Below are positions 6,416 through 60,495 of a stretch of 64,000 nucleotides of DNA, piece by piece. Both the position numbers and the translations under genes were made by a program. Each line of letters begins with the position of its first letter. Position 1 is the stretch's first letter. The DNA lies in IMG/VR virus record IMGVR_UViG_3300023174_000040, positions 124,001 through 188,000 of that record; one strand, 5' to 3'. A model generated the notes under the pieces. It worked only from the letters and a program-made list of their open reading frames with translations. It was not told the origin of the DNA and ran no database searches.

Positions 6416-6441
6416 TTTCTTTCGGGTACGGTTGTTGGTAG
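6416..6441 (+). promoter_or_regulatory. GGTACGG-N9-R motif, first of ~50 copies (class A, GTTTCYYTYYGGTACGGT)
   Basis: class A cores at 6425, 8508, 10652, 12675, 15366, 18209, 22573, 27422, 29429, 44340, 44658, 45372; all intergenic and + strand. Confidence 0.75.
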
Positions 6442-6473
6442 GAACAGATTAAAACTTTTTTTAAGAGACCAAT

Positions 6474-6719
6474 ATGAAGTACGCTAAAATTACTGGTAAT
6501 GGTGAATTTCCACTGGATATGCTCCGGTATGATACTGCATCCCCTGCCACAGAGGAAATGAGCAGTAAGATTGAGGGTACAATCAAGAACTACCAGCGTG
6601 GTTGGGAAGTCTACGTTAAAAGCGAAAGCAAGTTTCCTTGGACTGTGGGGCGTTGGGAAAGTTTTGGTTGCAAGATTGAAAGTATGCCCAAGAATTGGAG
6701 TACGGGATGTATTCGTTAA
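6474..6719 (+). CDS. hypothetical phage protein (FPxDMLRYD family)
   Basis: FPLDMLRYD...TVGRWESFG; directly after a motif copy. Confidence 0.65.
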   Translation: MKYAKITGNGEFPLDMLRYDTASPATEEMSSKIEGTIKNYQRGWEVYVKSESKFPWTVGRWESFGCKIESMPKNWSTGCIR

Positions 6720-6825
6720 TTATTATTTCTGTATTATCTATTTTGTTTTCAATTGGCATTGCCTTGAGTCCAATTCCTTGGATTATATTTGGAATGATTG
6801 ATCGTCTTATTCAAAGGTATTTGTA

Positions 6826-7035
6826 ATGAATAATCTTGATATTGCCGAATACAAAAACAAAACCGATTGGTATTTTGAGAATGAATACAGCACACTTCCT
6901 CTTTATGAGATTCTGGCGAATTATCCAGAGAGCATTTATGATGGAGTGGACAGCATCATAGAAGAAGCCCACGCAAAGGGCTTGCATTTTATTGAGACTG
7001 CCCGTATGCTCCGAGACTTTCTTGGAGAAATGTAA
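6826..7035 (+). CDS. hypothetical protein
   Basis: TAATG coupling at both ends. Confidence 0.55.
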   Translation: MNNLDIAEYKNKTDWYFENEYSTLPLYEILANYPESIYDGVDSIIEEAHAKGLHFIETARMLRDFLGEM

Positions 7036-7226
7036 TGAATGAACCTAATGTAAAAAGCCAAAAATGCAATTGTGGAAGCGGTAAGATTAGCGAGTGGATC
7101 TACGATGGATATAATATTCCATTGACTAAATGCTGTTCTAGTTGTAAAAAAGAAAAGTTGGGTAAATTTCGTACGGATATTATGAGTCAATATGACGCAT
7201 ATGAACCCATCGAACCGGAATTTTGA
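7035..7226 (+). CDS. small Cys-rich (SEC-C-like CxCGSGK) protein
   Basis: CNCGSGK and CCSSC. Confidence 0.55.
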   Translation: MNEPNVKSQKCNCGSGKISEWIYDGYNIPLTKCCSSCKKEKLGKFRTDIMSQYDAYEPIEPEF

Positions 7227-7368
7227 ATAGGTTAGGTAAGATGGGCAAAACAATTTATTCCACTTGCCAAAATTGATTCAATGCACTACAGTATTCTGGT
7301 TCCCGGTATGGGGAGTTTGATTAGGAGGAAACATATCATACCATATGTTTCATTTCATGGAGGTTAGT

Positions 7369-7776
7369 ATGAATCGTCTTGTTGCTGCTCTTTTTGTTTG
7401 TGTTCTGATTAGCGGTGTTGCTCACGCTCGTCCTCGACGCAGTTATAACACCTATAATACCCCGACTTATTCTGCCCCAAAGACATACAGTTATACTGGG
7501 GAAGATACCCCACGGCAATATAGTTATACTTCTGAAACTCCAACCAGAAGTTATAGCAATACCAGTTCGGCTCAGGGTGTTGCCGAAATCATGGCTCGTA
7601 CGGGCCGTGTTGGTCACTGGGGGGGCAACAATGGGTATGAGGGTTGCGGGAGCGGTTCCTCCCAACAGGCCGCATACAACAACTGCTGCTATGCTAATAG
7701 CAACCTCACGACTGTTGACGTAGGTTATGCACAAGGCAATAATGGCAAATGGTATTGCTGCCGCCGTTATCGCTAA
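7369..7776 (+). CDS. secreted Cys-rich protein, CAP/SCP-like C-terminus
   Basis: signal peptide ending VAHA; MAR..GH...EG.G..CCY..GKWYCC; GGAGG RBS. Confidence 0.55.
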   Translation: MNRLVAALFVCVLISGVAHARPRRSYNTYNTPTYSAPKTYSYTGEDTPRQYSYTSETPTRSYSNTSSAQGVAEIMARTGRVGHWGGNNGYEGCGSGSSQQAAYNNCCYANSNLTTVDVGYAQGNNGKWYCCRRYR

Positions 7777-7792
7777 TCTAATTTATTGTTAA

Positions 7793-7863
7793 AAACCCTC
7801 CGCACGACACTCTAATAGGTTCGTGACCCTAATAGGTTCGTGCGGAGGGTTATTTTATTTTTT
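7793..7863 (+). terminator. rho-independent terminator
   Basis: AACCCTCCGCACGA...TCGTGCGGAGGGTT followed by T-run. Confidence 0.7.
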
Positions 7864-8475
7864 ATGAAAAAAATTACTATTTTGGGTGATGTTCACGGCA
7901 AATATAGACGTATGCACGAAATAATTCGTGAGAAAGATCGTCATGAATACATAGTCCAAATTGGCGACCTGGGTTTCGATTTTTCTACATTAGATAATGT
8001 CGATCCAAAAAAGTTTGTTATTGTCGGCGGTAATCACGATAACTATTCAAAAATAATTAATATTCCACATTATCTTGGCGACTATGGATACATGGTTAAT
8101 TTCAACGGAATAGATTTTTTCTACTACCGTGGAGCATATAGTATTGATAAACAATACAGAACTATCGGAATTGATTGGTGGTCAGAAGAACAAGTGTCTG
8201 TTGAACAATTCATGAAGGCTAGGGAACTTTATAGAAGCATCAAGCCGGATATTATGCTCACGCATGATTGTCCGGAAACTATTTCTCCTTATTTGTTGGA
8301 TCCACATACTCAGATGTATCAAAATCAAACAGGATATTTCTTGCAAGAATTGTTTAATATTCACCAACCAAAAAGTTGGTATTTTGGACACTACCATAAG
8401 AGTTGGCAAATGACAGTCAATGGAACTAATTTTAGATGCTTAAATGAATTAGAAACTTGTAGTCTTGAAATATAA
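7864..8475 (+). CDS. calcineurin-like metallophosphoesterase
   Basis: GDVHG, GDLG, GNHD, THD, GHYH motifs. Confidence 0.9.
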   Translation: MKKITILGDVHGKYRRMHEIIREKDRHEYIVQIGDLGFDFSTLDNVDPKKFVIVGGNHDNYSKIINIPHYLGDYGYMVNFNGIDFFYYRGAYSIDKQYRTIGIDWWSEEQVSVEQFMKARELYRSIKPDIMLTHDCPETISPYLLDPHTQMYQNQTGYFLQELFNIHQPKSWYFGHYHKSWQMTVNGTNFRCLNELETCSLEI

Positions 8476-8555
8476 TCCCCCCCTCCTTGCCCTCCTGGTT
8501 TCCCTGCGGTACGGTTTGGTATCGGGTAGACTTCACAAATACAGGAGAAAAATAA

Positions 8556-8831
8556 ATGAGTGATATTACGATTCGTATGCCGGCTGGCGGTGTTAGTCTG
8601 CCAGATAATGCACAGTGGACTAACCGTATCCAGATTCGCAGCGAAAGCAGCAATCGCATCTATATTGTTGCACAGAATAAGGAATCTGGTCGTTGGGGCT
8701 GTTCTTGTCCTGCATATTGTAGCCGTCGATATTGCAAGCATCTTTTGAATGGTTGTAATCTTGATCCTAGTGAGATTCACGGCAATACTGCCATTGCCGA
8801 TAATCGTCCTAAGAACAAGAGGCTGAAGTAA
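8556..8831 (+). CDS. SWIM zinc-finger protein
   Basis: WGCSCPAYCSRRYCKH. Confidence 0.75.
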   Translation: MSDITIRMPAGGVSLPDNAQWTNRIQIRSESSNRIYIVAQNKESGRWGCSCPAYCSRRYCKHLLNGCNLDPSEIHGNTAIADNRPKNKRLK

Positions 8832-9208
8832 TGTCTCACCCATATCATCACTCTATCAGTAGTGCTAAAAAGTGGGGAGGAATTCCCGCCGATTATCAGG
8901 CCATTCATGATTGGTTTGATGAAAGCAAGAGTCATATGGCCGATATTCGCCATCGTGCTTTGAGGCATCATAGCGAAGGAATCTTTATGTGTGAAAAGAT
9001 TTTCGGCATTACAATCACCAATAGCAATGGCAGGGAAATTCCTGTTCGTTTTATTGGCGAGCAGCACGTTAAAGAAGATTTGGGATTCATCCCCACTGTC
9101 AGCGATTATTTTCGTGAGATGAAAATTAAGAGTTGGATGACAGGCAACAGGGATTTTAAGGCTCCGACAGTCTTTGAAATGAAAGACGAAGAAGAAGTTT
9201 CAGTTTAA
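8831..9208 (+). CDS. DUF6915-like protein
   Basis: HPYHHSxSSAKKWGG..DY..IHDWFDESK..RHRALRHH..EQHVKED. Confidence 0.7.
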   Translation: MSHPYHHSISSAKKWGGIPADYQAIHDWFDESKSHMADIRHRALRHHSEGIFMCEKIFGITITNSNGREIPVRFIGEQHVKEDLGFIPTVSDYFREMKIKSWMTGNRDFKAPTVFEMKDEEEVSV

Positions 9209-9517
9209 TGTCCCCGTTAGGAGATTAGGTTATGGAAAACAAGTTCTGCGAACTCGGTGAAAAAATCCTTAAACTCATGGAAGAATACAACATGAAAGTT
9301 TACGATTTAGAATTCATCAACGAACTGATTGAAAAAACTGTTGAGCGTGATGAAAAAGAGTGTTCTTATTAGGGTTTTGGCCCTATTTTTGGCCACTTAA
9401 TTGAACTTTACCGAGCGGGAAATTTTTGGTATATTTAGTGTTTTTTTAACGTAAATTTCCCCGCTCGGTAAAGTTTTTCCTATTTTTTTGGCCGCTATTT
9501 TGGCCGGTTCCAAAAAT

Positions 9518-9910
9518 ATGAATAAAAAACTTCTTGATATTTTTGTTGATCCAAAAATTCTTCTCAAAGAAGCAATAGAAAAAGATCTAAAAGAGATTGA
9601 AAAATTTCTTAAGAAAAAGATCTATGTGGTTGAATACTGGCATCTAGACGGAAAAGAATTAAAAACTGTTAGGAAAATAAAAGATCAATTAATTCTTCTC
9701 GGTAAGAATCTTGATATAATGGAAAACATAAAGTCTAAAACTTATCGCTATCATTGTTTCCGCATCAAATCATCTATAGATATAGATGATTTAAGAGAAT
9801 TGTTGAGAGTTTTTACAAGAAATACTATAGAAGCACTTATTAATCAAAAAATTCAAGTAGAATGTTCTACTAACGACGCCCAGCAGTGCATAATAGAATG
9901 TCCAGAATAA
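9518..9910 (+). CDS. hypothetical protein
   Basis: ORF from ATG 9518. Confidence 0.55.
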   Translation: MNKKLLDIFVDPKILLKEAIEKDLKEIEKFLKKKIYVVEYWHLDGKELKTVRKIKDQLILLGKNLDIMENIKSKTYRYHCFRIKSSIDIDDLRELLRVFTRNTIEALINQKIQVECSTNDAQQCIIECPE

Positions 9911-10428
9911 ACAATGACAAACACAGAAATTTTCATCACAGGTTATCTGCTAGGTATTGTTGGCATAGTTGCGATTTTATCTAGAAATATTCAAAAAGAA
10001 ATGAAACTACAAGATAAAATTAATAGTCTCTTATCTAAAAGAGTAGATATTCTTTCAGACCAATTAGATGCTGTTTATGAAATAGTCAAACTAGAGTCAA
10101 AAAGATTAGACATTTACAATGATGACAATAATGATGCTGATTGGTGGAAAAATAAATAAACCCAATACATCAAATTTCCGACTCTATTATCCTCTTGTGC
10201 AGGTCATTTATTATCTCTGAATAGAAATTTTCATTGAACTTTTTATCATTTTCTGCTCTAATCATGGCTTCATAGTGAAGTACGTTAAAAGAAAACGAGC
10301 CAATTAAAAAAGAAACTAAAAAAATCACTAATAATCTATATTTCATTATGTCCTCCAACTTATCTATGAGTATTCGATTTTATATTTTGTTAGGATTTGA
10401 TTAGTGAAATCTTTAGAAGGAGTTTTTC

Positions 10429-10635
10429 ATGGAAGAAAAAATTAAAAATATCATTTTCAATAAGTTCAATAGAGAGGTTGATAAAAACACAAATCTCTCA
10501 GAACTGGTAGAAGATAGTTTTGCCAAAGTTGAAATGCTATTTGCCATAGAAGAAGAATTGGGTAAGAGATTGACCGAGGACGAAATTCTTCAGATAGAAA
10601 ATATCGGGGATATTATAAACGTTTTCCAAAAGTAG
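10429..10635 (+). CDS. acyl carrier protein-like
   Basis: acidic 68 aa; EDSFAKVEMLFAIEEELG resembles the DSL phosphopantetheine helix. Confidence 0.65.
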   Translation: MEEKIKNIIFNKFNREVDKNTNLSELVEDSFAKVEMLFAIEEELGKRLTEDEILQIENIGDIINVFQK

Positions 10636-10667
10636 CCAGAAGTTTCCCTCCGGTACGGTTTGAGGAT

Positions 10668-11180
10668 ATGGGAAATCCCGATTATATCCGGCTTAATCTG
10701 GAGCGGGTTAGTGATCTTGGCGATATGCTAATCACTAAATCGAAAGAATTCTATGATACCGCAATATCAAATCTTAAAATAGAATTAAGATTTGATACCG
10801 TTAGCAATTATCATGGATCTCCTTTGAATGAAGAAACTAATTGGGGCGGTTATAAGAAACATATACCAACGGGATATAACGGCTGGATCGGTAGTATTAG
10901 TTGTCTTGTAAATTCTAATCAAAATCCATATTGCCGTATAGGGCATCTCACCGACGCAGACCAGCATCTTTTTGGCTATAAAGGATTCAGGGGATTCCAT
11001 ACAGGTAGTGGTTGTCCCGGTCATAAATTCGGAAAATGTCCAATGAATATTGGATTCTATTTCTTTATGGATGACTTTCCACTTTTGAAATCAAGATATG
11101 ATAAGTGGAAGATATTGAGTAGTTTTGAGAAGAATAAGAGTTGGGAAAATTCAAACCTTAATTACGAACAAGGATTGTGA
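10668..11180 (+). CDS. hypothetical protein, candidate leaderless gene
   Basis: ATG 9 nt after GGTACGG; ILSSF near C-terminus. Confidence 0.65.
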   Translation: MGNPDYIRLNLERVSDLGDMLITKSKEFYDTAISNLKIELRFDTVSNYHGSPLNEETNWGGYKKHIPTGYNGWIGSISCLVNSNQNPYCRIGHLTDADQHLFGYKGFRGFHTGSGCPGHKFGKCPMNIGFYFFMDDFPLLKSRYDKWKILSSFEKNKSWENSNLNYEQGL

Positions 11181-11869
11181 ACATGAGAATTAAAATTGAT
11201 ATGTATGTTTCAAAGAAGGACAGGCAGGCAGAGAATATTATTCTCAATGCCATTCCTTGCAAATATGAAGCAGCACACAAGGCGTGTGAATATGCTCGAC
11301 ATGTTCTAATGAAGCCTTGGCCCAAGGCCGAGAAAACAATTCTTCAGTGTCCACGAAGTAGTTATCTTTATGCCAGATATGTATTGAAAAAGCGTTGGCC
11401 GGAAGCAGAATCTATTATCGCAAAAGAAGCGTATAGCAGTTACTCTTATTCAAGGTTTGTTATCAAGGGAAGGTTTAAACTCGCTGAGAATAATAAAACA
11501 GAAGGATCTGTTTTTAATCCTCGTTGGGATACTAACTATAGTTTTCTTTATGCAAAAAACATTTCAAAAGAAAGGCTCAAAAGGTCAGTTGAAAATAAGA
11601 TTGCTTGCTCAAGCAGGAATGTTGATTACGCAAAAACCTTCTTGAAAAATAGAAGGTGGAAGACGGCAGAAAAATGGATTTTAGACCAAGGATATTGTAA
11701 GATACAAGAATATATGAAGATTCTTACTGAAAAAGATAAGAAGGATTTTCACAAAAAAATATTGTTGAGTGCGATGGCAAAGCAGCAAAGTCATTATAAT
11801 CCTGCTAAGGTTTGGATTGAAACTTATGGTCAAGATTTCTTGAAGGAGAGTACTAGTGGGATTGGATAA
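11177..11869 (+). CDS. helical-repeat phage protein
   Basis: several YARxVLxxxWPxAE repeats. Confidence 0.65.
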   Translation: MNMRIKIDMYVSKKDRQAENIILNAIPCKYEAAHKACEYARHVLMKPWPKAEKTILQCPRSSYLYARYVLKKRWPEAESIIAKEAYSSYSYSRFVIKGRFKLAENNKTEGSVFNPRWDTNYSFLYAKNISKERLKRSVENKIACSSRNVDYAKTFLKNRRWKTAEKWILDQGYCKIQEYMKILTEKDKKDFHKKILLSAMAKQQSHYNPAKVWIETYGQDFLKESTSGIG

Positions 11870-12194
11870 TTACTGGCAAATGGAAGATGGAAAGCCAGCA
11901 AATATTGATGGAGAATATAATGTTAGTGGCGGCATTTGTAGCGGTCATGGAAATCAAAGTTTTCGTGGCAAGGTCTACAATAGTTTTGTAGAAAAATTGA
12001 CAGGAGTGAGTCTTTACTCAAACATTATTGAAGTTGATGATGTGATGAAAGTCGCAGACATTCTTCGCAATGTTGGGTATGAGAAGGCAAAGAAGTATTT
12101 TGAATATCCCATTGACGAAAAAGAGTACGAAGATTTCGTTGAAATGTGGATAGCACACGCTATGAATGGTCATCGACTTGTAAGTTGGTACTAA
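11856..12194 (+). CDS. hypothetical phage protein
   Basis: MGLD start, SFRGKVY motif. Confidence 0.6.
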   Translation: MGLDNYWQMEDGKPANIDGEYNVSGGICSGHGNQSFRGKVYNSFVEKLTGVSLYSNIIEVDDVMKVADILRNVGYEKAKKYFEYPIDEKEYEDFVEMWIAHAMNGHRLVSWY

Positions 12195-12208
12195 AAAGAG
12201 AAATTAAA

Positions 12209-12649
12209 ATGACAACCATTGCAAAATTTGACGCAACTAAGTTTGGTGGATATAATGATGCACCTCCTAACCTGAGAGAAATCACAGAGAAAGAATGGGC
12301 TAGAAGTCCATATTTTAGCGTCCATAGTTTCTTTCATAAAGAATTTCGCCAATTCATAATTAAGAGTTTGCCTACTAGAGATGAAAAGACCGGTGAAATT
12401 CTTCATGAAGGCCGGGATACTTATCATGATTTCAATTTGTATTACATTGACGAACATCATGGCTATGCTATTACCAATGATTATTGGGAGGGTAAAGTTC
12501 GTGTATTTCATTTTGGTTGTGATCACAAATATCACGAACTGAGTTTCCAAGAATGTAATTACAGAGGTATTAAGCATCTTGGAAATTGTTGGCACGTTCA
12601 TGAATGCAGTGAATGTGGCAATATTTATGGTTGCGATAGTAGCGACTAG
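12209..12649 (+). CDS. hypothetical protein with C-terminal Zn-binding motif
   Basis: CxH...CWH..CxxCG..DSSD. Confidence 0.6.
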   Translation: MTTIAKFDATKFGGYNDAPPNLREITEKEWARSPYFSVHSFFHKEFRQFIIKSLPTRDEKTGEILHEGRDTYHDFNLYYIDEHHGYAITNDYWEGKVRVFHFGCDHKYHELSFQECNYRGIKHLGNCWHVHECSECGNIYGCDSSD

Positions 12650-12694
12650 GATCAAGAGGATCAAGTTTCCCTCTGGTACGGTTGTGGGTTGTCC

Positions 12695-12788
12695 TGAACA
12701 AATGTAGAACTATTCGCAGCCAACTGTCTTATTAACAGTTCCTTCTAATGGGCGGCCGGTAAGGAAGGGTTCGACTCCCTATGGTTCA
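12695..12788 (+). ncRNA. atypical tRNA-like RNA (possible anticodon TAT)
   Basis: T-arm AGGG-TTCGACT-CCCT; 6-bp stem AACTGT/ACAGTT with 7-nt loop; long variable arm; acceptor-like pairing to ATGGTTCA. Confidence 0.5.
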
Positions 12789-12817
12789 ATTTGCTTGATT
12801 TGGTTAAATTAAATTAA

Positions 12818-13030
12818 ATGCTTATCCCCTCTGAAATCACAAACTTGTTAGTCGAGGACGTTCTCAAGCCTTTCGTTTTATTGAGAGATAGGCTCAAAGA
12901 AATCCAAAGAGAAATCCAAAGAATTGAAACAAACCTTGACACAAATCTTGGCAAGGTTGTTGATTTAATCAGAGATAGCGAAAAAAAACGAACCAAAATG
13001 CTGGATAGTTTCAGGAAAGAAAATGGCTAA
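12818..13030 (+). CDS. small coiled-coil protein ending KMLDSFRKENG
   Basis: ORF; heptad pattern. Confidence 0.55.
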   Translation: MLIPSEITNLLVEDVLKPFVLLRDRLKEIQREIQRIETNLDTNLGKVVDLIRDSEKKRTKMLDSFRKENG

Positions 13031-13334
13031 GAAAAGAAACTTTAGCGATATTTTTTCTCGCTATAAAACTTACGATGATTCTCACGGCAGGGGAAACGTA
13101 AAAGAGTGGAATCAAACATTCACTGAAAAGATGAATCTTGACGAAGCCAGAAGGCAAATCAAGAACAATGATCCTCTTTCTGTGATGGGTTTCAATGAAA
13201 TGCCAAGCATTGAAGCACTGAATGATTCGTATAGAAATCTAATGAAAATTCACCATCCAGATAGAGGCGGTGATCCAATAGTTGCGAAAAAAATTATCGC
13301 AGCGTATACTGTGCTTTCGGAACAACTTCGATAA
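13023..13334 (+). CDS. J-domain (DnaJ-like) protein
   Basis: YRxLxxxHHPDRGGD..I..AY..L with HPD. Confidence 0.8.
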   Translation: MAKKRNFSDIFSRYKTYDDSHGRGNVKEWNQTFTEKMNLDEARRQIKNNDPLSVMGFNEMPSIEALNDSYRNLMKIHHPDRGGDPIVAKKIIAAYTVLSEQLR

Positions 13335-13398
13335 ACATTTTTAATAGAAATAATTCATGGTTGCCGAAGAGCCATCAAAGGCAATTTTTATCTAAAAA

Positions 13399-13713
13399 AT
13401 GGCTAAAAATAAAGGTATAGATTGTTTTAGAGAAATTTCACTAAAAGAAATTCTAGAGCATTTTAATAGCGATCATATTTTTATAGAAGTTGATCATAAT
13501 GAAGATCGACTCTATAGCCCTTGCCATGATATAGAATATCACGATAGTGAATTAGGTCTTTTTTGGGGCGGAAGTTGTGAATTAACAATGAGCCCAGATG
13601 ATAAAGTCAAGATACTAGACCACGATACTGTTAAAATAATTAAGAGCAAAAACGAGTATAATTTGGGTAAGATTTTAAGATTTTTTGTTTGTAAACCTCA
13701 CAGTTTTATTTAA
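13399..13713 (+). CDS. hypothetical protein
   Basis: ORF in co-oriented run. Confidence 0.5.
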   Translation: MAKNKGIDCFREISLKEILEHFNSDHIFIEVDHNEDRLYSPCHDIEYHDSELGLFWGGSCELTMSPDDKVKILDHDTVKIIKSKNEYNLGKILRFFVCKPHSFI

Positions 13714-13999
13714 AGAAAGGATAAATACAGTGAAGCTTAAAGCTGAAAAAGTAAAGGAAAACATGGATAAAAATGAGGCGGTTAGTATCAGTGACGACCA
13801 AGTTCTTAATTTGCTTTTCAAGCAGGTTGAAAAGCCAAAGAATTATTTCAAGATCAAGGTTGTAAATGTTTTCGGTTATAACTATAGAATCAATATTTGG
13901 TCTAATATCGAAGAAGATGGATTGACCAAGTGTAAGATCTCCCACAGTTATTTTGTTCGTGTTGTGGATGATATTCTTACCATCTATCATTGATGATGA

Positions 14000-14996: not shown

Positions 14997-15015
14997 ATGA
15001 ATAAAAAGATGAAGC

Positions 15016-16497: not shown

Positions 16498-16573
16498 AGG
16501 ATCAACATACTACAATGATGTCATTACTCGGAATACTGAGCGGAATAATCGAAATAATCAGGAAGAAATAACA

Positions 16574-52650: not shown

Positions 52651-52824
52651 GTGAAAATCATTATTGAAGTGAACATGGACAACGATAGTTTCAATGATAA
52701 CCCCAACGAACTGGGTGAGATTCTAACTCAAATCCCCCATAACATTAAAGCGGGGGATAGCGGTAATCTCAAAGACTCTAACGGCAACAAGGTGGGATTT
52801 TGGGACGTATTTGAAAGTTTCTAG
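52651..52824 (+). CDS. small protein (57 aa, GTG start), candidate leaderless
   Basis: GTG 9 nt after AGTACGG; D.NGNKVG.W. Confidence 0.55.
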   Translation: MKIIIEVNMDNDSFNDNPNELGEILTQIPHNIKAGDSGNLKDSNGNKVGFWDVFESF

Positions 52825-53944
52825 TACAGGTATCCTATAAGCGGTGGAAGTCAAAAACGCCACTGGACGTTAGACCAGTATGGATACTTCTAAGGAAAAG
52901 AAAATGTATTGGATTTCTCGCTGGAAAGTTTTCACAATGAAAAACTGGATTTGCTACAATCTGTTTGGTGAACATCCAGATGATGTTGACACTTTTGGCA
53001 TGGTTAGTGGGCTAGGCATTTTGGCTTTCTTGATTTTTTGGACTAGTTATCTTTTTATCTATATTCCTCTTTATTTCTGTCGCTAAAGGATTGAACTAAT
53101 GGATACCATTGATACTCTCAAGATTTGATACTCTCAAGATGCTCAGGTGATACTCTCAAGATGCTCAGGATTTTTGTGGATACTGCTCCCCTGAATAGTC
53201 AGGGTATGGTTGAGCCTGATACTCTCAACTTCATTAGCATGAGGCTGGGTAGTATTGTTGAAACTCTGGAGCGAGAAAAAACTCTCTCTGATGAACTCCG
53301 TCAGATTTTGGTACGGTAAAGGTTTGTCCTAAACATCACTAAACATCACTAAAGAGTAATAAAAATGACAATAACAGACATTTTCATCATCGGTATGTAT
53401 CTAACTAGTCTTTTTGGTACGGTTGTGATCGTAGCGAGTTTCTTTTGGGTGATTGACACTTTGGTCAATGCACTTTACAAGCCAACCTCTAAGATTAAAA
53501 CCATGATTGCTGAGGATGGTAATGAATGGCAGGTGGGGTACATTGACGAGTTCCCCGGCTATAAGAAACTTTTTTAGTACGATCAATCATCAAGGAGAAA
53601 ACCAATGAACGACTTCTACGATGGATTCTATGAAGATTGGTGGGGGACTAAGAATGTGAAGGGTCACGACGCCCACAAGGGATACAATAAACACGATATT
53701 GCCTCAAGGAGAAACTATCGGGACAGGGTATTAGAATACCTTAGACTGGAGTTTTGTGATATTGGGGATTGGTGGCATCTCCCCATCAGCGGTGTTAATA
53801 TCAACAGGGTATTGTTAATCAGCCTTATTAACGACTGCCAGAATGATAATATGAAGATCAACAACGCCAGCGGTGTTGTCTATGAATGGCTGAAGGGCAG
53901 GAATCTGATTTAGTACGGTGAATAGGCAACAGAGGAGAGTAACA

Positions 53945-54265
53945 ATGCAAGAACAAGTCGAACTTTGGCTCGCTGCTTTGACTGAGAAGTCTAACACCAC
54001 TGGGGCTGAGACTAAATACATTCTTGAACCGGGGCGAAAGTATACTAGAGTGGTTCGTCAAGAGCGTTGGCTGGGTAGTAACGGGGAACCGCTGTGGGCG
54101 GTTAACAAAAGTGTCCATGCCTTTATAGACCAAAATGGGGATATTTATAAGGCAGCAAGTTGGAAGGCTCCGGCCAAAAATGGAGCAAGATTTAATGTTG
54201 TGAACGATATTCAACGGTTGGTCGAAGTTTGTGATCCCTATGGTAGTTATCTCTACAAGAGGTAA
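53945..54265 (+). CDS. T4-like-phage hypothetical protein
   Basis: GRKY...VHAFID..GDIYKAASWKAPAK..RFN. Confidence 0.7.
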   Translation: MQEQVELWLAALTEKSNTTGAETKYILEPGRKYTRVVRQERWLGSNGEPLWAVNKSVHAFIDQNGDIYKAASWKAPAKNGARFNVVNDIQRLVEVCDPYGSYLYKR

Positions 54266-54881
54266 GATCAGGTACGGTTATCAACCAGAGGAGAATAACA
54301 ATGCTTTGGCAAAAGAAAAAGAATCGGTATAATACCAAGCCGTATTACGAAGCAAAAGAGGGAGATGTTGTGTATCAACTCCGATATATTCCCTTCAAGG
54401 GTTGGCAAGCATCAAGGCAGGAAGGCAACAGTTGCACCCTGCCGGGAATAAAGAAGGACATGGCGGAGGCTATGGGCTGGTGCATGAGTAACCTTTCGGT
54501 ACGGTAGAGAGATATGGAAAACAGTTTTTACGGTTTCTGGTCAAAGGGAGAAAAAATGCCAGACGATACAAAAACTAGTAGTGGTCTTGACCGGCAAACT
54601 TTGAGTTTCCTTGAAGATTATTACGCAAGGGAGACTGTGAAGCCGGTTTCAAGCCTTATCGAAGCCGCCACACAGTTTGAAAAGGAGCCAGATTTTAAGA
54701 ACTATCTGGCTATGAGGGATCTTTTTAGGGATATTGAAGCAAATATGACACGGAGAGACGCCTTCCGTTGTCATAATCGGTAAAGGATAAGATTCGGTAC
54801 GGTTAGGGTTTGTTCCGACAGCAAGCCAATGAGGCAAGCGGGAACCAAAGGGTTGGTAACTATAAGCAGGAGATGATTACT

Positions 54882-55142
54882 ATGGGTCGCCAAGTTGGTC
54901 AGAAGGGTGTTGATCTTGAGACGTTTCTCACCACGGTTATCGAAGTGCAGCGGGCTGGTGGCAGCGTCGAGGACGTTGCAAGCAAGTTGGGCATCGTTCC
55001 GGGTTCGGTGAGTGTTCGTCTGAGCCAGTTGCGGAAGAAGCACGGGCTGAACATCCCGAAGTTTGAGGGTGGTGGTCGCACCAGCAATACCAAGGAGCGT
55101 GCGACGGAGATTCTCGCCAGCCTTGGCGTCGAGATGCTCTGA
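54882..55142 (+). CDS. HTH protein, paralog 5 of 6
   Basis: GGSVEDVASKLGIVPGSVSVRLSQLRKK; GC hairpin 55154-55189. Confidence 0.8.
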   Translation: MGRQVGQKGVDLETFLTTVIEVQRAGGSVEDVASKLGIVPGSVSVRLSQLRKKHGLNIPKFEGGGRTSNTKERATEILASLGVEML

Positions 55143-55362
55143 AGTTAGTCACACTCACCCCCCGGCCAAATAACAGGCCGGGGGGTGAGGCCCACGGGTT
55201 TCCAGTGGGTACGGTTGGTGGTTCCTGGTTGAAGCCGGGAATCTGACTGGTTGTGAATAACTAAGAGAATAACTAAGAGTTTCATCATGATGTGCTTCCT
55301 TGGATTGTGTAGCGGTATTATTTCTATTATCATTGATAATAACAACCCACGCTAAACAATCT

Positions 55363-55409
55363 TCGACCGTCCCGTTTGGGGATTCACTAGGTTCAATCCT
55401 AGCGGTCGA
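55363..55409 (+). ncRNA. mini tRNA-like structure without anticodon arm
   Basis: TCGACCG/CGGTCGA stem; CCC-GTTT-GGG hairpin; CTAGG-TTCAAT-CCTAG T-arm. Confidence 0.4.
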
Positions 55410-56520
55410 TTTTGGTACGTCGATTTTGGTACGGTAAAACTTCAAAGGAGAATCCAAATGTGGCTTGCAATGGTCATTCGTGACAGTGTTCCTGAGAGTG
55501 TTACCAGTTTCGACAACTACTATGATGCAGTGGGTTGTGCGGACGATTGGATTATTAAGTTTGACCCGTCAGTAACTCATTCAACCCTCCCCCGATATTC
55601 TAGGGGTGAGAGTTACCATAAGGATGGTTTGAGGGTAGATATTCTAGAAATCAACTAGAAACTAGAATCTGGTACGGTCGGGAGTTGTTACCCGAAACGA
55701 AAGGAAATCATGGCGTTAGAAACCACTATTGATGATCTGGTTCAGCGGTTCGGAGAAGAGCCGTTCCCATGCACCTTCATCCATCGGTTCGACCCCGAAA
55801 GGGTGGCGGCATTCGACCGTGAACGGGCGGTACACTGGCTCATCGGCAAGGTCAATGGACCGAAGATCATGTTATCACTCCTGCCGGATCGTCTTGTGTT
55901 CGAGGAGTTGATTGATTCATTGGATTCCTATGGTTGGAATCTGCTGGTCGAGGGTGGCATTAACTATCGCATCAAGAGGCATGACTAGAATCCGGTACGG
56001 GTTAGTGTTGTTCCCTTACCACTTCTCAGGAGTTAAAGATGAAAGTTAGTAAGACTCGTCGCCTGAAGTTGCTCAAGGACATGGAAGCCTCAAAGGAGAT
56101 TCACCAGCGGGGTCACTACACTGTCAACGAGCGGGTTCTGGTTGATACCATCGTCGGCATCATTGAGAATCAGCGGATGATTGAAATATCGGAGGTTGTG
56201 GAACCGGAATCTAGTACGGGTTAGATTTGTACGGTATATTATTTGTAACAACAACCCCTCAAGGAAAAATCAAGATGAACCTCCAGATTAAAGTCGAGAA
56301 GTATATGGACGTTGTGAACGGCAAAATGGCACGGAAGGATTGGATCGAATCTTGCTTTGCAGGTGATATGTATGAAGCAGTTATGTTCGTGAAAAGACTT
56401 TTTCAGAAGGGCGTTAAACTTCCCTGCGGAGATCGTCTTCCTTATCCTAAGGAGGGTTGATAAGGAAAATAGATTCCAGTACGGTTTAGAGTTGAGACCC
56501 AACCACTAAGGAACCAGAAG

Positions 56521-56925
56521 ATGCCGTGGCAAATCGTTGATGAACCCAAGCCAGTCCAGTTCTATCCGGTCGAGACAGATAATGGCACAGAGTTTCGTCG
56601 GGTTGGTGGTCTTATGGTCAAGGGAACCATTCGACACTCCAAGGCTGACGAGGATCAAGTCTGGCGGGTTGTTTATACTAATCGGGCCGGAAGAGGCACT
56701 TTTAGTATTACGGCTCCAGATCGCACCGTAGAGCGTCAGAATCACAAACTAGACTTTGTGAAAGTAAAGGCTAAGGCTACGGTCTACAGGAACGGGAATC
56801 GTAAAGGTGGAATGACCCCTCACGCTTTCCAGCGGGAACTAGCAGAAATGTGCGGTGGAAACTTCGCTGGTAGTTTCTATGGTCAAATGGTCAATGCTGT
56901 GAAGGTGGCATTGGGGGCCGAATAA
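56521..56925 (+). CDS. hypothetical protein
   Basis: motif upstream; long hairpin terminator 56938-57005. Confidence 0.65.
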   Translation: MPWQIVDEPKPVQFYPVETDNGTEFRRVGGLMVKGTIRHSKADEDQVWRVVYTNRAGRGTFSITAPDRTVERQNHKLDFVKVKAKATVYRNGNRKGGMTPHAFQRELAEMCGGNFAGSFYGQMVNAVKVALGAE

Positions 56926-58535
56926 AGAGGAATAAAGTCCCCCCGATCATATTGCCGATTCCACGCTTTGCGTAGAGTTTTCAATATGATCGGGGGATTT
57001 TTTTGTTCTTTCCTTTTATGTTTTTGGTACGGTAAAAAACCAAAAGGAGAAAAAGTGATGACCCCAGAGCAAAAAAATATCATCGACCGTGCTCTTAGCA
57101 CTCTTATCTGGGAGACTAAGAAGAATATTCTGGACACCCAGAATAGCGGTGAGTTTGATGCCGCAGTCAAACAGTTCCTCGTTGAACAGAGGAAGTTATT
57201 GGAGGATGCAACCATACTCCGAAAGGAACTCAGGGAAGAAAGTCTTTGGAATCCAGTACGGTAAAGGTTTGTCTTAACCCTAGCCCAAAGGAAAAACAAA
57301 TGTTCAAGAACATCAAGTGGTTCGATGGATTGTCTTGGGTCAGTGGTTACATTCTGGAGATCATGTTCAAGGACGGTAAGAAGGGTTACATTAAGAATAC
57401 TGACCGCAAAAAGATTAGTCATCTTTTTGAAACTTTGTGGAACGACCACAACATCATCGGTTTGACCGTCTATAATATTGATGAAAAGGTTGAGGATGCT
57501 AAGTATCGTTATCTTGGTTGAAATAGGTACGGTAAACTCTTGTTCCATCAACAAAGAGGACTAAAAGAAATGACTGCCGTTATCACTGGCCCGAATGTTG
57601 AAAAGTATCGTCTGCTCAGTCTCAAGAGTGCATTGAAGTTGGAGACTAAAGGATTGAAGCACTCAAGGTTCAACGTCAGCCAGATTGTGAAAGGTATTCT
57701 GGCCGAAAAGGGAATCAAGCCTAAGAATAATAAGATTCTGTTGCTCGTCCAGTTTGAAACCTACTTGGAGGGGGTCATCTGAGGCTTATGTCTGGTACGT
57801 AAAAGGCTTACCCCCGGAGAACTTGTGATGGCCGCTCGTTACGTTACCATCTCTGAAAACATGATTGAGCCTAGGCTCCTTGTTGAAGGTTACTTAAACG
57901 CAAACACAATAGCAGAACGCAGAGAGGCATTTCACTTATATCGTGTATTAACTGAAAGTGAAATGAGTCAAGTCGCTAGAGAAATGGGTTACATTGCCTT
58001 GGTTGATCTTAATCCAAGGTGGATTGAAACCAGTTACTGTAGATTTTATGTTCGGTTAACCTAGGGTAAAACCTAGGTTAACTTTTTAAGTTAACAACTT
58101 AATGTCTGGGTACGTAGAAGGGGTACGCTTTCGGTACGGTAAACTCTTGCCGATAACTCTGGGAGTTTCATCATGAAGAAGTATGAAGTAACCTGTTGTG
58201 ACACGGGTAAAACAATAGTCTTGACTCATAAAGAGATGGTCGAAAAGTTCGGCAAGGTTGAGTTCAAAGAGATTCTGAAAGGATACCTTCCCCATCTGGT
58301 CGCTGTTGAAGTATTCAGTACGGTAGATGGTTGTGAACCCAACACTCAAAGGAGAGTCTAATGGATGACTTTGACCACTTTGATATGATGCAGGAAACAG
58401 TCCTCTGGCCTTGGGTTGATGATCCAAGTTATGACAATGAAGATGCAGAGGATGAATGTAACTATGATCCAACGGAAGAAGAAAACTAGTACGGTAAGAA
58501 ACTGTTATCTTTCAATAACCAATAAAGGAAAAACC

Positions 58536-58781
58536 ATGAAGCGTCAGACTGTTAGCGTTGAAACGTTCGTCAATGTCATCATGCGGCATCTCAACAATGG
58601 TGGAAACCAAACCAGTGTTGCTAAGGAGTTGGGAATCACTCCGGCAGCGGTTTGCCTCCGCCTCAAGTATCTCCGTCAGAACGGTGCTTGTGTTCCTAAG
58701 ACTAAGAAAGAGTTGAAGTCTCGCCGGAACAAGGCAAGTATCGTGGCCGCTGCCAACAAGGAAATGAAGGGTTGGAAGTGA
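58536..58781 (+). CDS. HTH protein, paralog 6 of 6
   Basis: GGNQTSVAKELGITPAAVCLRLKYLRQNG; GC hairpin after. Confidence 0.75.
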   Translation: MKRQTVSVETFVNVIMRHLNNGGNQTSVAKELGITPAAVCLRLKYLRQNGACVPKTKKELKSRRNKASIVAAANKEMKGWK

Positions 58782-58870
58782 AAAGGGGAGAGGGGGGAGA
58801 AACAAAAAACTCCCCCCTCTCCTTCTGGTACGGTTAATGTTTGTAACCTTAACCAAAAAGGAAGTTTCAA

Positions 58871-58981
58871 ATGCGTAAGACTCGTTGTGCTGGCAAGGCG
58901 GTTGGAATGAGTTATTGCAAGCATCTTCGCAAGTTTGGCAAGCGGGTCGCTAACAAGGCAACCCGCCGGGAAAAGTTCTAA
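58871..58981 (+). CDS. 36-aa highly basic peptide
   Basis: MRKTRCAGKAVGMSYCKHLRKFGKRVANKATRREKF; AAGGA RBS, motif upstream. Confidence 0.5.
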   Translation: MRKTRCAGKAVGMSYCKHLRKFGKRVANKATRREKF

Positions 58982-59246
58982 TCTGGTACGGTGTCAGCGA
59001 TTGAGACTGACAAACTGTTGTTGAAAGCAAATGATAAGGGAGGGATTAAAGGGATGAAAAAGATCATTGTCGAGATCGAGGCCAGCGATTGGACTCAGGA
59101 AAACATTGATAGTTTACATGATTGGCTTCAGGACGAACTACAAATGGGCAACATGGGAACTGGCGATGATGCTCATGTCGTGAGCATCAAGTTTGCTGAA
59201 AGTCTCTGAGGCAACCCGCCGGGAAAAGTTCTAATCTGGTACGGTG
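58956..59246 (+). repeat. ~37-bp exact direct repeat flanking a small gene (59054-59209)
   Basis: AGGCAACCCGCCGGGAAAAGTTCTAATCTGGTACGGTG at ~58956 and ~59209. Confidence 0.9.
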
Positions 59247-59523
59247 GTTGAGTGTAAGGAACTTCAACCTCTGGAGAAAACAGATGACTCCTGTTGAGAT
59301 TGCCATTAAGGCCAAAGACTTCTTGAAGGGTAAAAAGTATCCTTCAGAGAGAATGATCCAAGACGCATTAGAAGCCAGCATGGTTTCTTGTGGCATTGAT
59401 CCCGAATCGGGTGCGGGGATGTTTCTTTATGGTCTGTCCTTGCAAGTCTGGTCTGAGCAGCGGTGATAGTATCTGGTACGGTTACTGAGTGTAAGGAACC
59501 TTCAACCCTCTGGAGTTTAGAAG

Positions 59524-59997
59524 ATGAACGACATTCAAATGCTGGCTCTGAGCAAAGTGAAGTTCGACCGGGATAACATTCCGGTTGGGGATCATACGGT
59601 TGATTTCACGGTTCGGGTCAGTGGAACCGTCAAGGTGGGCGACGATTACGAAAGGGACGCTACCACTAGCATCCCGTGGTTGGAATCGGTGGCTCTGTGG
59701 CAGGAAACCGCTAGTGCTGCTTGGGATAGCCTTATCAGTCGCATGGATAAGGGGGAGACTATCACCCGTAGTGATCTGGTTGCAATGCGTAAGACTGGCC
59801 CGCTTGCCACTGGGGTGCTCGTAGATTGCATTAGAACGGCGTTGGTCAAGGGGGAGTCTGCGGTAGGGTCTATCCTTGATCGTGTCACAGAAGTCAAAGA
59901 GGGCGTCGAGAACGTGAAGCGGGAGTTGGTGAAACAACTCCCCAAGCAAAGTTGCAAGGGGGCAACTAAGGTAGTCTGCGATTGGCAGATAGTCTAG
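59524..59997 (+). CDS. hypothetical protein
   Basis: GGAG RBS; last gene of the motif array. Confidence 0.65.
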   Translation: MNDIQMLALSKVKFDRDNIPVGDHTVDFTVRVSGTVKVGDDYERDATTSIPWLESVALWQETASAAWDSLISRMDKGETITRSDLVAMRKTGPLATGVLVDCIRTALVKGESAVGSILDRVTEVKEGVENVKRELVKQLPKQSCKGATKVVCDWQIV

Positions 59998-60015
59998 GTT
60001 GTCTATTCGATTCCT

Positions 60016-60091
60016 GGCAGCGAGTAATGGGTACAGCCGGGCGTTAGGCCCGTGCCGAGGCCATGCAGCCATTAGTGTGGCGCTCGCTGCC
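60016..60091. ncRNA. candidate GC-rich structured RNA
   Basis: GGCAGCGAG/CTCGCTGCC, TAATGG/CCATTA and CGGGC/GCCCG nested stems. Confidence 0.45.
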
Positions 60092-60495
60092 GGGGGGAGG
60101 GGCTAAACTCTCCCCCCCTTATTACTGGCGGGTAGGATTCTGGTACGGATTCGTGGTATGTGAGAAGAATCCGGTACGGTTCCTTGAAAAATGAAAACAG
60201 TTTTTGGTACGGTATATTTTTACAAAGTTAAAAACTGAAAAACTAAAACTGAAAAACCCTGGGGGTAGGGTTTGGTACGGGTACCGGTTCAACGCCATTA
60301 CGCCCTTTTTCTTTTCCCTTTATATTTCTTTTTCCCGAGCCATGAACTTTAAATGAACTTTAGAATGGGCTTCCCTACTTTTTTTCAAAGTTATATCCAA
60401 TTAACTTTAAACATACCCCCATAAACCTATAATTTTCCAAAAACGGTTTCTAAAAAAATCCGGCGGGTATAATTTTTGAGATACTGTAGGGTTTT

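What the first reader, a model, noticed from the sequence alone, without database searches (positions are those of the whole stretch)
6416..60290. About 50 co-oriented GGTACGG-N9-(Y)R sites: a fixed-geometry phage promoter class driving one-gene units, several leaderless
Seen: (G/A)GTACGG(T) occurs about 50 times, on the + strand, mostly at gene junctions and often right after a GC hairpin. The 10th base after the core is a purine in about 45 of ~50 copies by manual reading, usually preceded by a pyrimidine (e.g. 8524, 15382, 22589, 45388, 49946, 54812, 57542, 59491). In 7 cases that base is the first base of the start codon, mostly with no Shine-Dalgarno (10668, 44356, 44674, 46503, 51429, 52651, 54514). 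For tRNA-Lys it gives a 4-nt leader. Two subclasses exist: GTTTCYYTYY-GGTACGGT at 6-46 kb and GATY(Y)/AATCT-GGTACGG at 47-60 kb. A few copies have TTGAC-like hexamers 16 nt before TACGGT (27422, 45768). Known: a YR step marks bacterial transcription starts, and TGnTAnnnT is an extended -10. Inference: this is a promoter with its core at -16 to -10, about 2 nt further upstream than a sigma70 -10, suggesting a phage-encoded or phage-modified sigma/RNAP.
Basis: partly seen in the sequence, partly recalled or inferred. Interest (0 to 1): 0.9.

Follow-up and report, generated by a model that had tools for sequence, protein, structure and literature searches.

The report
Jumbo phage GGTACGGT promoter class
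An uncultured 323-kb freshwater phage carries about 50 same-strand copies of a short DNA signal (GGTACGGT, then a start point exactly 10 bases later) that most likely switches on its early and middle genes one by one, and no known polymerase or sigma factor that could read it was found in the three quarters of the genome examined.

Summary
GTACGG occurs 63 times on the + strand and once on the - strand (7.4 expected on both). About 50 copies sit at gene junctions with the consensus T-Y-Y-G-GTACGG-T. The 10th base after the core is a purine in 37 of the 39 best sites, and a Y-R step occurs there and at no neighbouring offset. Start codons lie either exactly at that base (11 genes, spacing kept in a 70-86% identical relative) or at least 11 nt further on behind a Shine-Dalgarno. 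None lie in between, which marks a transcription start. The window is part of a 323-kb lake jumbo phage. The motif covers its early/middle arm and is absent from the structural genes. It is dense in only three related contigs. A more distant relative has a different motif (A-rich box, CGTTAT, N6, ATG) with the same geometry shifted by 3 nt. This suggests the -10 hexamer here is CGGTWN in the canonical register, with GGTA as an upstream extension. No RNA polymerase or sigma was recognisable in about 250 of 323 kb. Two tRNAs that begin at or inside the core remain unexplained. Verdict: a real, lineage-specific phage promoter class. The kind is familiar, but the sequence is new and its reader is unknown.

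The parts
6416..60290 (+). Span of the window that holds the motif copies (63 GTACGG on +, about 50 with promoter-like flanks)
6415..46404 (+). Class A sites (GTTTCYYTYYG-GTACGG-T). Core starts: 6426, 8509, 10653, 12676, 15367, 18210, 22574, 27423, 29430, 44341, 44659, 45373, 45769, 46388
   Evidence: Flank scores of 8-13 bits. The same class occurs at 19 further sites at contig positions 33-124 kb, ahead of AAA+, CobS-like, ligase and GyrB-like genes
47766..60223 (+). Class B sites (GATTYTG / GAATCTG / variants, then GTACGG-T). Core starts: 47777, 49215, 49931, 51414, 51713, 51812, 52169, 52636, 53311, 54499, 54797, 55209, 55429, 55672, 56479, 57027, 57256, 58134, 58828, 58986, 59239, 59476, 60143, 60174, 60207. 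Weaker-flank junction sites: 46488, 48320, 48451, 50360, 52376, 53913, 54272, 55995, 56214, 57527, 58318, 58489, 60275
   Evidence: The region has 40-45% GC against 33-36% elsewhere
10653..11180 (+). Leaderless unit: core at 10653, ATG at 10668 (170 aa)
44341..44646 (+). Leaderless unit: ATG at 44356 (96 aa)
44659..44889 (+). Leaderless unit: ATG at 44674 (71 aa)
46488..46856 (+). Leaderless unit directly after tRNA-Lys: ATG at 46503 (117 aa)
   Evidence: The ortholog in L029 keeps the 9-nt spacing although 5 of the 9 spacer bases differ
51414..51707 (+). Leaderless unit: ATG at 51429 (92 aa)
   Evidence: (called by the JGI gene caller)
52636..52824 (+). Leaderless unit: GTG at 52651 (57 aa). 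The L029 ortholog has ATG at the same position
54499..54783 (+). Leaderless unit: ATG at 54514 (89 aa)
46407..46480 (+). tRNA-Lys, 13 nt after core 46388. The predicted start at 46403 gives a 4-nt leader
48327..48413 (+). tRNA-Ser (anticodon ACT), beginning 1 nt after GTACGGT of site 48320. This conflicts with a start at position 10. The cassette is absent from both relatives
50364..50438 (+). tRNA-Glu, beginning inside core 50360 and sitting behind a strong terminator. This conflicts with a start at position 10. It is absent from L029
50436..51143 (-). HNH-type ORF inserted together with tRNA-Glu, between a motif core and the gene it drives in L029
   Evidence: (weak HNH hit)
50297..50326 (+). 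Intrinsic terminator 34 nt before core 50360. Similar hairpins lie at 45717-45745, 46337-46364, 48266-48297, 58054-58083, 58790-58825 and 60092-60117, each before a motif
45691..45796 (+). Copy 1 of a duplicated hairpin + promoter + tRNA-Lys 5' stub. Copy 2 is at 46315-46416. Together they flank gene 45859-46305
54882..55142 (+). One of three paralogous small winged-helix genes (the others are at 45446-45700 and 50011-50265). Each lies behind a motif with a 65-75 nt leader
   Evidence: Lake metatranscriptome contigs cover 54845-55343

Best explanation
The motif is the promoter of the early/middle genes of an uncultured 323-kb freshwater myovirus-like jumbo phage. Transcription starts at the purine 10 nt after GTACGG (Y-1, R+1, T+2).

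The invariant block covers -16 to -10. The most economical register is a -10 hexamer CGGTWN at -12 to -7, a four-base upstream extension GGTA at -16 to -13, a class-specific pyrimidine-rich block at -26 to -17, and no -35 element. This layout resembles an extended -10 promoter read by a sigma-like factor on a multisubunit RNA polymerase.

In the 44-60 kb region nearly every small ORF has its own copy. About one unit in five has no leader, so the mRNA begins with the start codon. The remainder carry a Shine-Dalgarno at least 11 nt downstream of the start.

The repeated promoter also marks the junctions at which gene cassettes are exchanged between related phages.

Status of each step:
- Shown: the motif statistics, the geometry, the start-codon distribution, conservation at syntenic junctions, and restriction to the early/middle arm and to this lineage.
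- Inferred: that the motif initiates transcription, the exact start, the register, and that a phage-encoded factor sets the specificity.
For: - Strand bias of 63:1 and an eight-fold excess over shuffles.
- A single sharp Y-R peak at positions 9-10: 32 of 39 sites, against 0-3 at adjacent offsets.
- Start codons at position 10 in 11 units, none at positions 11-20, and a continuous spread from position 21 behind AGGAG-type sites.
- The JGI gene caller independently places three gene starts at position 10.
- In relative L029 (70-86% nt identity) the motif is again 29:1. It sits at the same gene junctions with diverged flanks, and the spacing to leaderless starts is unchanged.
- The motif follows local gene orientation. 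It is on + at contig positions 33-188 kb. A single copy on - at 217 kb lies ahead of a - strand gene. It is at chance level in the structural region at 196-257 kb.
- Genes behind it are takeover-type small ORFs, tRNAs, ligases, AAA+ ATPases, CobS/CobT-like and GyrB-like proteins.
- 9 of 50 copies lie just after a strong hairpin, against 2.5 expected. Some of these are true terminators, so the downstream gene needs a new start.
- A more distant relative (L255) has another motif, an A-rich box, N10-11, CGTTAT, N6, ATG. It shows the same two-mode start-codon pattern: position 7, then from position 18. That is the pattern here shifted by 3 nt.
- Sigma70-consensus promoters are not clearly enriched in 44-61 kb: 45 found against 33 +/- 7 in shuffles.
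Against: - There is no direct 5'-end evidence. The only RNA found is four metatranscriptome contigs over 54845-55343, which begin 33 nt after the predicted start at 54812 and cannot map a start.
- tRNA-Ser begins 1 nt after GTACGGT and tRNA-Glu begins inside the core. Both lie behind hairpins, so a start at position 10 would truncate them. Both cassettes are missing from relatives. They may be recent insertions at the motif that are expressed by read-through or from another promoter, but this is not shown.
- Several + strand gene groups that follow - strand genes have no copy (21364-22555, 25609-27412, 40723-43167, 51213). The motif is therefore not the only way + strand genes are expressed.
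- No sigma or RNA polymerase was found (and the Pfam columns).
Confidence: 0.72

Rival explanations
1. RNA processing signal. Long polycistronic transcripts are cut by a phage or host endoribonuclease that recognises GGUACGGU and cleaves 9 nt downstream at the Y|R step. This releases one-gene mRNAs, some of them leaderless.
For: This reading explains co-orientation, junction positions, the fixed distance to position 10 and the Y-R step equally well. Most units in 44-60 kb have no terminator between them. Gene groups without the motif show that other promoters or read-through must exist.
Against: - The motif recurs directly after strong intrinsic terminators (50297, 58054, 60092), where a new start is needed.
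- Its layout (TG-like step, an invariant block at about -16 to -10, Y-1 R+1) is that of a promoter. Relative L255 has a classic box / spacer / hexamer / N6 / start arrangement in the same role.
- No ruler-type RNase with this specificity is known to me (own knowledge).
Confidence: 0.08
2. A promoter of the single-subunit (T7-like) kind, with the start inside or just after the core (at the GG). The conserved T-G-T at positions 9-11 would then be part of the initially transcribed region.
For: tRNA-Glu would begin exactly at +1 and tRNA-Ser at +4. Both sit behind hairpins and have no other obvious promoter. Several sites have hairpins that begin 1-3 nt after the core, for example 47777, 58986 and 27423.
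Against: - It does not explain 11 start codons at exactly position 10 without a Shine-Dalgarno, the empty interval at positions 11-20, or the single Y-R peak.
- The 8 nt before position 10 are not conserved, unlike positions -4 to -1 of T7-type promoters (own knowledge of T7 promoters).
- No T7-like polymerase (Pfam RNA_pol) appears among the genes called over about 240 kb.
- Folding profiles gave no signal for a 5' hairpin at a fixed place.
Confidence: 0.07
3. Ordinary host sigma70-type extended -10 promoters (TGnTAnnnT), read by unmodified host RNA polymerase with no phage factor involved.
For: TGGTACGGT fits TGnTAnnnT in 23 sites and YGGTACGGT occurs in 35. T-12, A-11 and T-7 of that register are invariant. 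A few sites have good TTGACA boxes at 16-17 nt (27423, 45769). No phage sigma or polymerase was found.
Against: - The invariant C-G-G at the three least constrained positions of a sigma70 -10 is not expected (own knowledge).
- In that register the start is at the 9th nt, not the 7th.
- The motif is dense in only three closely related contigs of IMG/VR. A related phage uses CGTTAT instead. This suggests the specificity travels with the phage, although different hosts could also explain it.
- The putative host hint, a 56% GC proteobacterial MAG sharing the IS, gives no reason to expect such a -10.
Confidence: 0.12
4. The motif is primarily a DNA recombination or homing target, or an operator for a DNA-binding protein (for example the triplicated winged-helix protein). 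It would not be a start signal.
For: Indels between relatives are bounded by motif copies: the tRNA-Ser cassette, the tRNA-Glu + HNH cassette, and the duplication flanking 45859-46305. HNH genes sit next to two tRNAs.
Against: A recombination site alone would not keep a fixed distance to start codons and a Y-R step, nor follow gene orientation over 160 kb. Cassette exchange at repeated promoters is known for T4-type phages as a by-product of promoter repetition (PMC2839356, PMC4122927). The two roles are therefore compatible.
Confidence: 0.04

Closest known systems
PeSL cassettes (promoter-early stem-loop) of T4-type phages (PMC2839356, PMC4122927)
   Same: A highly repeated early promoter, sometimes with a stem-loop terminator just upstream. 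It precedes individual small ORFs in plastic regions, and repeats mark the borders of insertions, deletions and replacements between close relatives.
   Different: The T4 promoters are host sigma70-type with -35 and -10 boxes. Here there is no -35, the core is GGTACGGT, and only about 18% of copies have the stem-loop. No T4 gp55 homologue was found by phmmer in the roughly 240 kb searched.
Extended -10 promoters of sigma70-family holoenzymes (TGnTATAAT)
   Same: There is no -35 element, a TG-like step lies upstream of the -10 element, a purine start follows a pyrimidine, and T/A/T occur at the positions that would be -12/-11/-7 in one register.
   Different: C-G-G is invariant in the middle, and in that register the start is at the 9th rather than the 7th nt. 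In the other register (CGGTWN) the spacing is canonical, but -11 is G and -7 is free.
Early promoters of RNA-polymerase-encoding jumbo phages (phiKZ, AR9), and the AR9 late motif AACA-N6-T-A/G(+1) (PMC7598289, PMC8244752, PMC5312081)
   Same: A roughly 10-nt highly conserved block is centred near -10 and found bioinformatically ahead of early operons. It differs from phage to phage. AR9 late promoters share the layout of short block, fixed spacer, then Y-R start.
   Different: Those motifs are AT-rich, and those phages encode split beta/beta' subunits. No DFDGD-type motif or RNA polymerase domain was found here in about 250 kb. The phiKZ study reported no leaderless transcripts (PMC8244752).
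CGT-type -10 elements of ECF sigma factors (own knowledge; E. coli sigmaE GTC as cited in PMC7598289)
   Same: The putative hexamers CGGTWN (this phage) and CGTTAT (L255) begin with CG and have T at -9. This resembles CGT-containing ECF -10 boxes.
   Different: ECF promoters need a GGAAC/AAC-type -35 at 16-17 nt, which is absent here. No Sigma70_r2 or r4 hit was found in the genome parts examined.
Phages rich in leaderless mRNAs, such as Thermus phage phiYS40
   Same: Many phage genes have the start codon at the transcription start, at a fixed distance from a -10-like element.
   Different: Those promoters are TATAAT-like and read by the host polymerase. The host here is unknown.

Membership tests
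sigma70-type extended -10 promoter | TG at -15/-14 upstream of the -10 hexamer | tested here: inconclusive
   In the register with TACGGT as the hexamer, G at -14 occurs in 46/63 sites and T at -15 in 36/63. The full TGGTACGGT occurs in 23 sites.
sigma70-type extended -10 promoter | A -10 hexamer of form TAnnnT with weakly constrained inner bases | tested here: not met
   T, A and T are invariant, but the inner C-G-G is invariant too (63/63 by construction). The motif is the top strand-biased 6-mer.
sigma70-type extended -10 promoter | Start about 7 nt after the last base of the hexamer | tested here: inconclusive
   The start is at the 9th nt for TACGGT and at the 7th nt for the alternative hexamer CGGTWN. 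Relative L255 supports the second register.
sigma70-type extended -10 promoter | Read by a sigma70-family factor | not testable with these tools
   No phage sigma was found by Pfam annotation or phmmer in about 240 kb. The host is unknown.
T4-type PeSL | A repeated early promoter at the borders of indels between close relatives | tested here: met
   The tRNA-Ser, tRNA-Glu/HNH and 45859-46305 cassettes are bounded by motif copies.
T4-type PeSL | Composite with a stem-loop terminator | tested here: not met
   Only 9 of 50 copies have a strong upstream hairpin.
T4-type PeSL | The promoter is of host sigma70 early type (-35 and -10) | tested here: not met
   There is no -35 signal in the logo. 5 sites have at least 5 of 6 TTGACA matches, against 1.4 expected.
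T7-like single-subunit polymerase promoter | Contiguous conservation from about -17 to +1 or beyond, and a T7-like polymerase gene | tested here: not met
   The 8 nt before the start are unconserved. No Pfam RNA_pol hit in the called genes of about 240 kb. About 66 kb of the genome was not seen.
phiKZ/AR9-type jumbo-phage polymerase promoter | The genome encodes split multisubunit beta/beta' with the DFDGD motif | tested here: not met
   The regex and pattern searches found none in about 250 kb. About 66 kb was not seen.
sigma54 promoter | GG-N10-GC spacing (TGGCAC-N5-TTGC) with the start 12 nt after GC | tested here: not met
   TGGTAC resembles TGGCAC, but the downstream T-T-G-T lies 4 nt too far away. 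Start codons sit on that G/A, not 12 nt after it.

The most novel reading that the evidence does not exclude
The motif is read by a promoter-specificity factor or polymerase with no detectable sequence similarity to known sigma factors or RNA polymerases. It would be either brought in with the virion or made very early, and it would have co-diverged with the promoter within this clade of freshwater jumbo phages (GGTACGGT-N8-R here, A-box/CGTTAT-N6-A in a relative). It would also be coupled to unusually frequent leaderless translation.
Probability: 0.3. Interest if true: 0.75.

Novelty: new variant of a known kind. Interest (0 to 1): 0.5.

Why it matters
Phage-specific promoter classes are the entry point to a phage's gene-expression programme. 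They have repeatedly led to new transcription machinery and to useful orthogonal expression tools.

In this case a very clean signal (about 50 copies, fixed geometry, many leaderless genes) exists in a large uncultured freshwater phage lineage, and its reader could not be found by sequence. The motif gives an immediate operational map of transcription units for a genome in which most genes have no annotation. It separates early/middle genes from structural genes. It also points to where gene cassettes are exchanged.

A related phage has replaced the motif while keeping the geometry. This offers a natural pair for identifying the specificity determinant by comparative genomics.

Tried and rejected
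- RNA evidence: no RNA run holds the DNA itself. Two lake metatranscriptomes found through a related protein gave only four contigs over 54845-55343, which cannot map a start.
- Three 300-nt repeats behind motifs were suspected to be a non-coding RNA. Alignment shows a Shine-Dalgarno, an ATG and third-position changes, so they are a protein family.
- Rfam found only the four tRNAs.
- Folding profiles around the sites were flat and did not help place the 5' end.
- Stop-codon recoding: no gain in long ORFs from reading any stop as sense.
- Search for the polymerase or sigma:
  - Genome walking covered contig positions 8.4-247 kb with Pfam-annotated gene calls, plus DNA to 257 kb.
  - DxDGD regexes found nothing.
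  - phmmer with E. coli RpoD and T4 gp55 found nothing.
- Large unannotated proteins (1682, 1395, 1030, 651, 601 aa) gave only RCC1, beta-propeller, fn3 or peptidase hits.
- Cultured relatives: none by megablast or tblastn.
- The winged-helix paralog gave only weak generic HTH matches by Pfam, PDB sequence and fold search. It is not evidence for a sigma.
- A full-text literature search for the core sequence returned only unrelated primers.
- The sigma54 reading was rejected on spacing.

Full report
What the window is. The window equals positions 124001-188000 of IMG/VR contig IMGVR_UViG_3300023174_000040, a 323,267-bp viral contig from lake water. A 251-kb contig is 95-98% identical. An independent assembly splits the same genome into 212 + 122 kb pieces that wrap around the contig ends, so the genome is probably complete. 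DNA runs that hold it are all freshwater metagenomes. No cultured phage is close. The structural module contains gp25-like and gp5/gp27-like baseplate genes, so the phage is myovirus-like.

The observation. GTACGG occurs 63 times on + and once on -. Dinucleotide shuffles give 7.4 +/- 2.9 for both strands together. It is the most strand-asymmetric hexamer in the window. The logo shows T at -4, Y at -3 and -2, G at -1, the invariant core, T at +1, then little information until T-T-R-T at positions 8-11 after the core. I scored each copy's flanks against the other copies and compared with random positions. 39 copies exceed the 99th percentile. About 13 more have weaker flanks but sit at gene junctions. 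About 11 lie inside ORFs with no consensus and are probably chance or decayed copies.

Among the 39 best copies, position 10 is a purine in 37. A pyrimidine-purine step at positions 9-10 is present in 32, against a background frequency of 0.226. The same step with the purine at position 8, 9 or 11 occurs in 3, 2 and 0 copies.

The two upstream classes are also real. GTTTCYYTYYG precedes the core at 6-46 kb and at 19 further sites elsewhere in the genome. GATTYTG/GAATCTG-like sequences precede it at 47-60 kb. There is no general -35 element. Only 9 of 50 copies follow a strong hairpin, against 2.5 expected. Some of these hairpins are clear intrinsic terminators.

Why the 10th base is taken as the transcription start. 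I pooled 95 non-redundant sites from the window, the rest of the genome and a diverged relative. The first start codon that opens an ORF of at least 40 codons lies at position 10 in ten units, eleven with site 46488. It lies at no position from 11 to 20. From position 21 upward the distribution is continuous, and those starts are preceded by AGGAG-type sites. The few hits at positions 2-9 are in-frame GTG/ATG upstream of evident Shine-Dalgarno-led starts. This two-mode distribution, with either no leader or a leader of at least 11 nt, is what a fixed start at position 10 predicts.

The JGI gene caller independently placed three gene starts at position 10. In relative L029 (contig IMGVR_UViG_3300048670_001253, 70-86% nt identity, syntenic with window 45-58.6 kb) the motif is again 29:1 on the gene strand. 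It occupies the same junctions while its flanks are about half identical. The three orthologous leaderless units keep the 9-nt spacer length although its sequence has changed, and one shows a GTG/ATG exchange at the start codon.

Distribution in the genome and beyond. Pattern scans and genome walking recovered about 250 kb of the contig. Consensus-flanked copies lie on the + strand from 33 to 188 kb. There is one on the - strand at 217 kb, ahead of a - strand gene. The motif is at chance level in the structural region at 196-257 kb, both here and in 46 related structural loci.

Genes behind class A copies include RuvB-like and CobS-like AAA+ ATPases, a CobT-like protein, DNA ligases, a GyrB-like ATPase, the MoxR/VWA pair, tRNAs and a tmRNA region. 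Class B copies head small ORFs of unknown function in a region of higher GC. This is the profile of early/middle expression.

In IMG/VR only three contigs show the motif at high density: the source contig, its 251-kb near-twin, and L029's contig. Phages whose CobS-like protein is 52-60% identical do not have it.

A related phage with a different motif and the same geometry. Locus L255 (IMGVR_UViG_3300010885_076238, 204 kb) shares CobS-like (59%), CobT-like, MoxR (56%) and other genes with this phage. Its most strand-biased hexamer is CGTTAT (29:2). 21 of the 29 copies have an AAAATAAAAAT-like box 10-11 nt upstream. Start codons lie at the 7th nt after the hexamer in six units, with three more at the 5th or 6th. 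None lie at positions 8-17, and Shine-Dalgarno-led starts begin at position 18.

This is the same distribution as here, shifted by exactly 3 nt. Aligning CGTTAT with CGGTWN (the last three core bases plus the next three) puts both elements at the canonical -12 to -7 with a 6-nt discriminator. GGTA is then an upstream extension at -16 to -13. The alternative register removes the anomaly. Which register is read cannot be decided without experiments.

Who reads it. I found no multisubunit polymerase signature. No Pfam polymerase or sigma domain appears among the called genes over contig positions 8.4-247 kb. phmmer with E. coli RpoD or T4 gp55 against all ORFs of at least 60 codons found nothing. 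About 66 kb of the genome (257-323 kb and 0-8.4 kb) was not examined, and divergent factors would be missed. Large unannotated proteins gave only repeat or protease hits.

Two observations argue that specificity is carried by the phage: the invariant C-G-G, and the replacement of the motif in a relative. A difference in hosts could also explain the second. An IS605-family element (TnpB) present in this contig but absent from its near-twin has a 92% identical copy next to 56% GC DNA in a freshwater MAG labelled Proteobacteria. This is a weak hint to the host.

What does not fit. tRNA-Ser starts 1 nt after GTACGGT of site 48320, and tRNA-Glu starts inside the core of site 50360. A start at position 10 would truncate both.

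The tRNA-Ser cassette replaces a 1.1-kb segment present in both relatives. The hairpin before it has the better T-run on the opposite strand, so read-through from the 47777 promoter is plausible. The tRNA-Glu plus an opposite-strand HNH ORF are inserted, relative to L029, exactly between a motif core and the gene it drives there. A strong terminator lies just upstream. A TATATT box 5 nt before the core could serve as another promoter, but this is speculation. tRNA-Lys, with 13 nt here and in L029 and 26 nt for a different tRNA-Lys in the near-twin, fits a start at position 10. I regard the two conflicting tRNAs as recent insertions at the repeated motif, but the alternative of a start at the core is kept as a rival.

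Several + strand gene groups that follow - strand genes lack the motif, so other promoters or read-through exist.

Cassette exchange. Differences between the three related genomes are bounded by motif copies. These are the tRNA-Ser cassette, the tRNA-Glu/HNH cassette, and a duplicated hairpin + promoter + tRNA-5' stub flanking gene 45859-46305. This mirrors the PeSL cassettes of T4-type phages (PMC2839356, PMC4122927). However, the promoter there is of host type and the stem-loop is a regular part.

Comparison with known systems. Jumbo phages that encode their own polymerases have phage-specific, roughly 10-nt AT-rich early motifs centred near -10. AR9 late promoters have a short block, a fixed spacer and a T-A/G start (PMC7598289, PMC8244752). 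The layout is similar. The composition, the lack of polymerase genes in the parts examined, and the many leaderless genes are different. The membership table lists the tests.

Verdict. The promoter reading and the position of the start are well supported by sequence statistics and comparative evidence, but not by RNA 5' ends. The inference of an unusual polymerase or sigma is open. This is a new, lineage-specific variant of a familiar kind of element.

Noticed in passing
L255:1-20834 (IMGVR_UViG_3300010885_076238, 128032-148865): A related jumbo phage has its own dense promoter-like motif: AAAATAAAAAT, N10-11, CGTTAT, N6, ATG. CGTTAT is 29:2 by strand, and nine units have the start codon 5-7 nt after the hexamer.
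   Followed up: partly
L041, L158, L161, L162 (contig about 196-247 kb and 8-30 kb): ATATATA is enriched upstream of ORFs in the structural region (16 of 43 upstream regions, against 2.5 expected). Several copies lie 5-7 nt before an ATG. This is a candidate late promoter class, and it too would give leaderless mRNAs.
   Followed up: partly
window 4034-5338: An IS605-family element with a TnpB gene (4050-5294, - strand) is absent from the 95-98% identical 251-kb relative. A 92% identical copy lies next to 56% GC DNA in a freshwater MAG labelled Proteobacteria (L163).
   Followed up: partly
L029 reverse strand 1886-2170: The tRNA-Lys orthologue is interrupted in the anticodon loop by about 215 nt (a possible group I intron). 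ARAGORN therefore finds no tRNA there.
   Followed up: no
L010:3620-4080 (contig about 113.4-113.8 kb): The phage encodes a tmRNA (tag GTVNYAMAA) right after a tRNA-Leu, about 480 nt downstream of a class A motif.
   Followed up: no
window 45446-45700, 50011-50265, 54882-55142: Three paralogous 84-86 aa winged-helix proteins (81-83% identical), each behind a motif with a long conserved leader. The third is the only part of 52650-58600 seen in lake metatranscriptome contigs.
   Followed up: partly
window 50436-51143 (-) and 62414-63481 (-): HNH-type ORFs abut the 3' ends of tRNA-Glu and tRNA-Gln on the opposite strand. This suggests mobile tRNA/HNH cassettes.
   Followed up: no
window 48327-48413: The tRNA-Ser has the unusual anticodon ACT (reading AGT), with a long variable arm.
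   Followed up: no
window 44000-60000: The region densest in motifs has 40-45% GC, against 33-36% in the rest of the window.
   Followed up: no
window 60496-60882 (-): An ORF with a SET-domain (lysine methyltransferase) Pfam hit lies just past the last motif copies.
   Followed up: no
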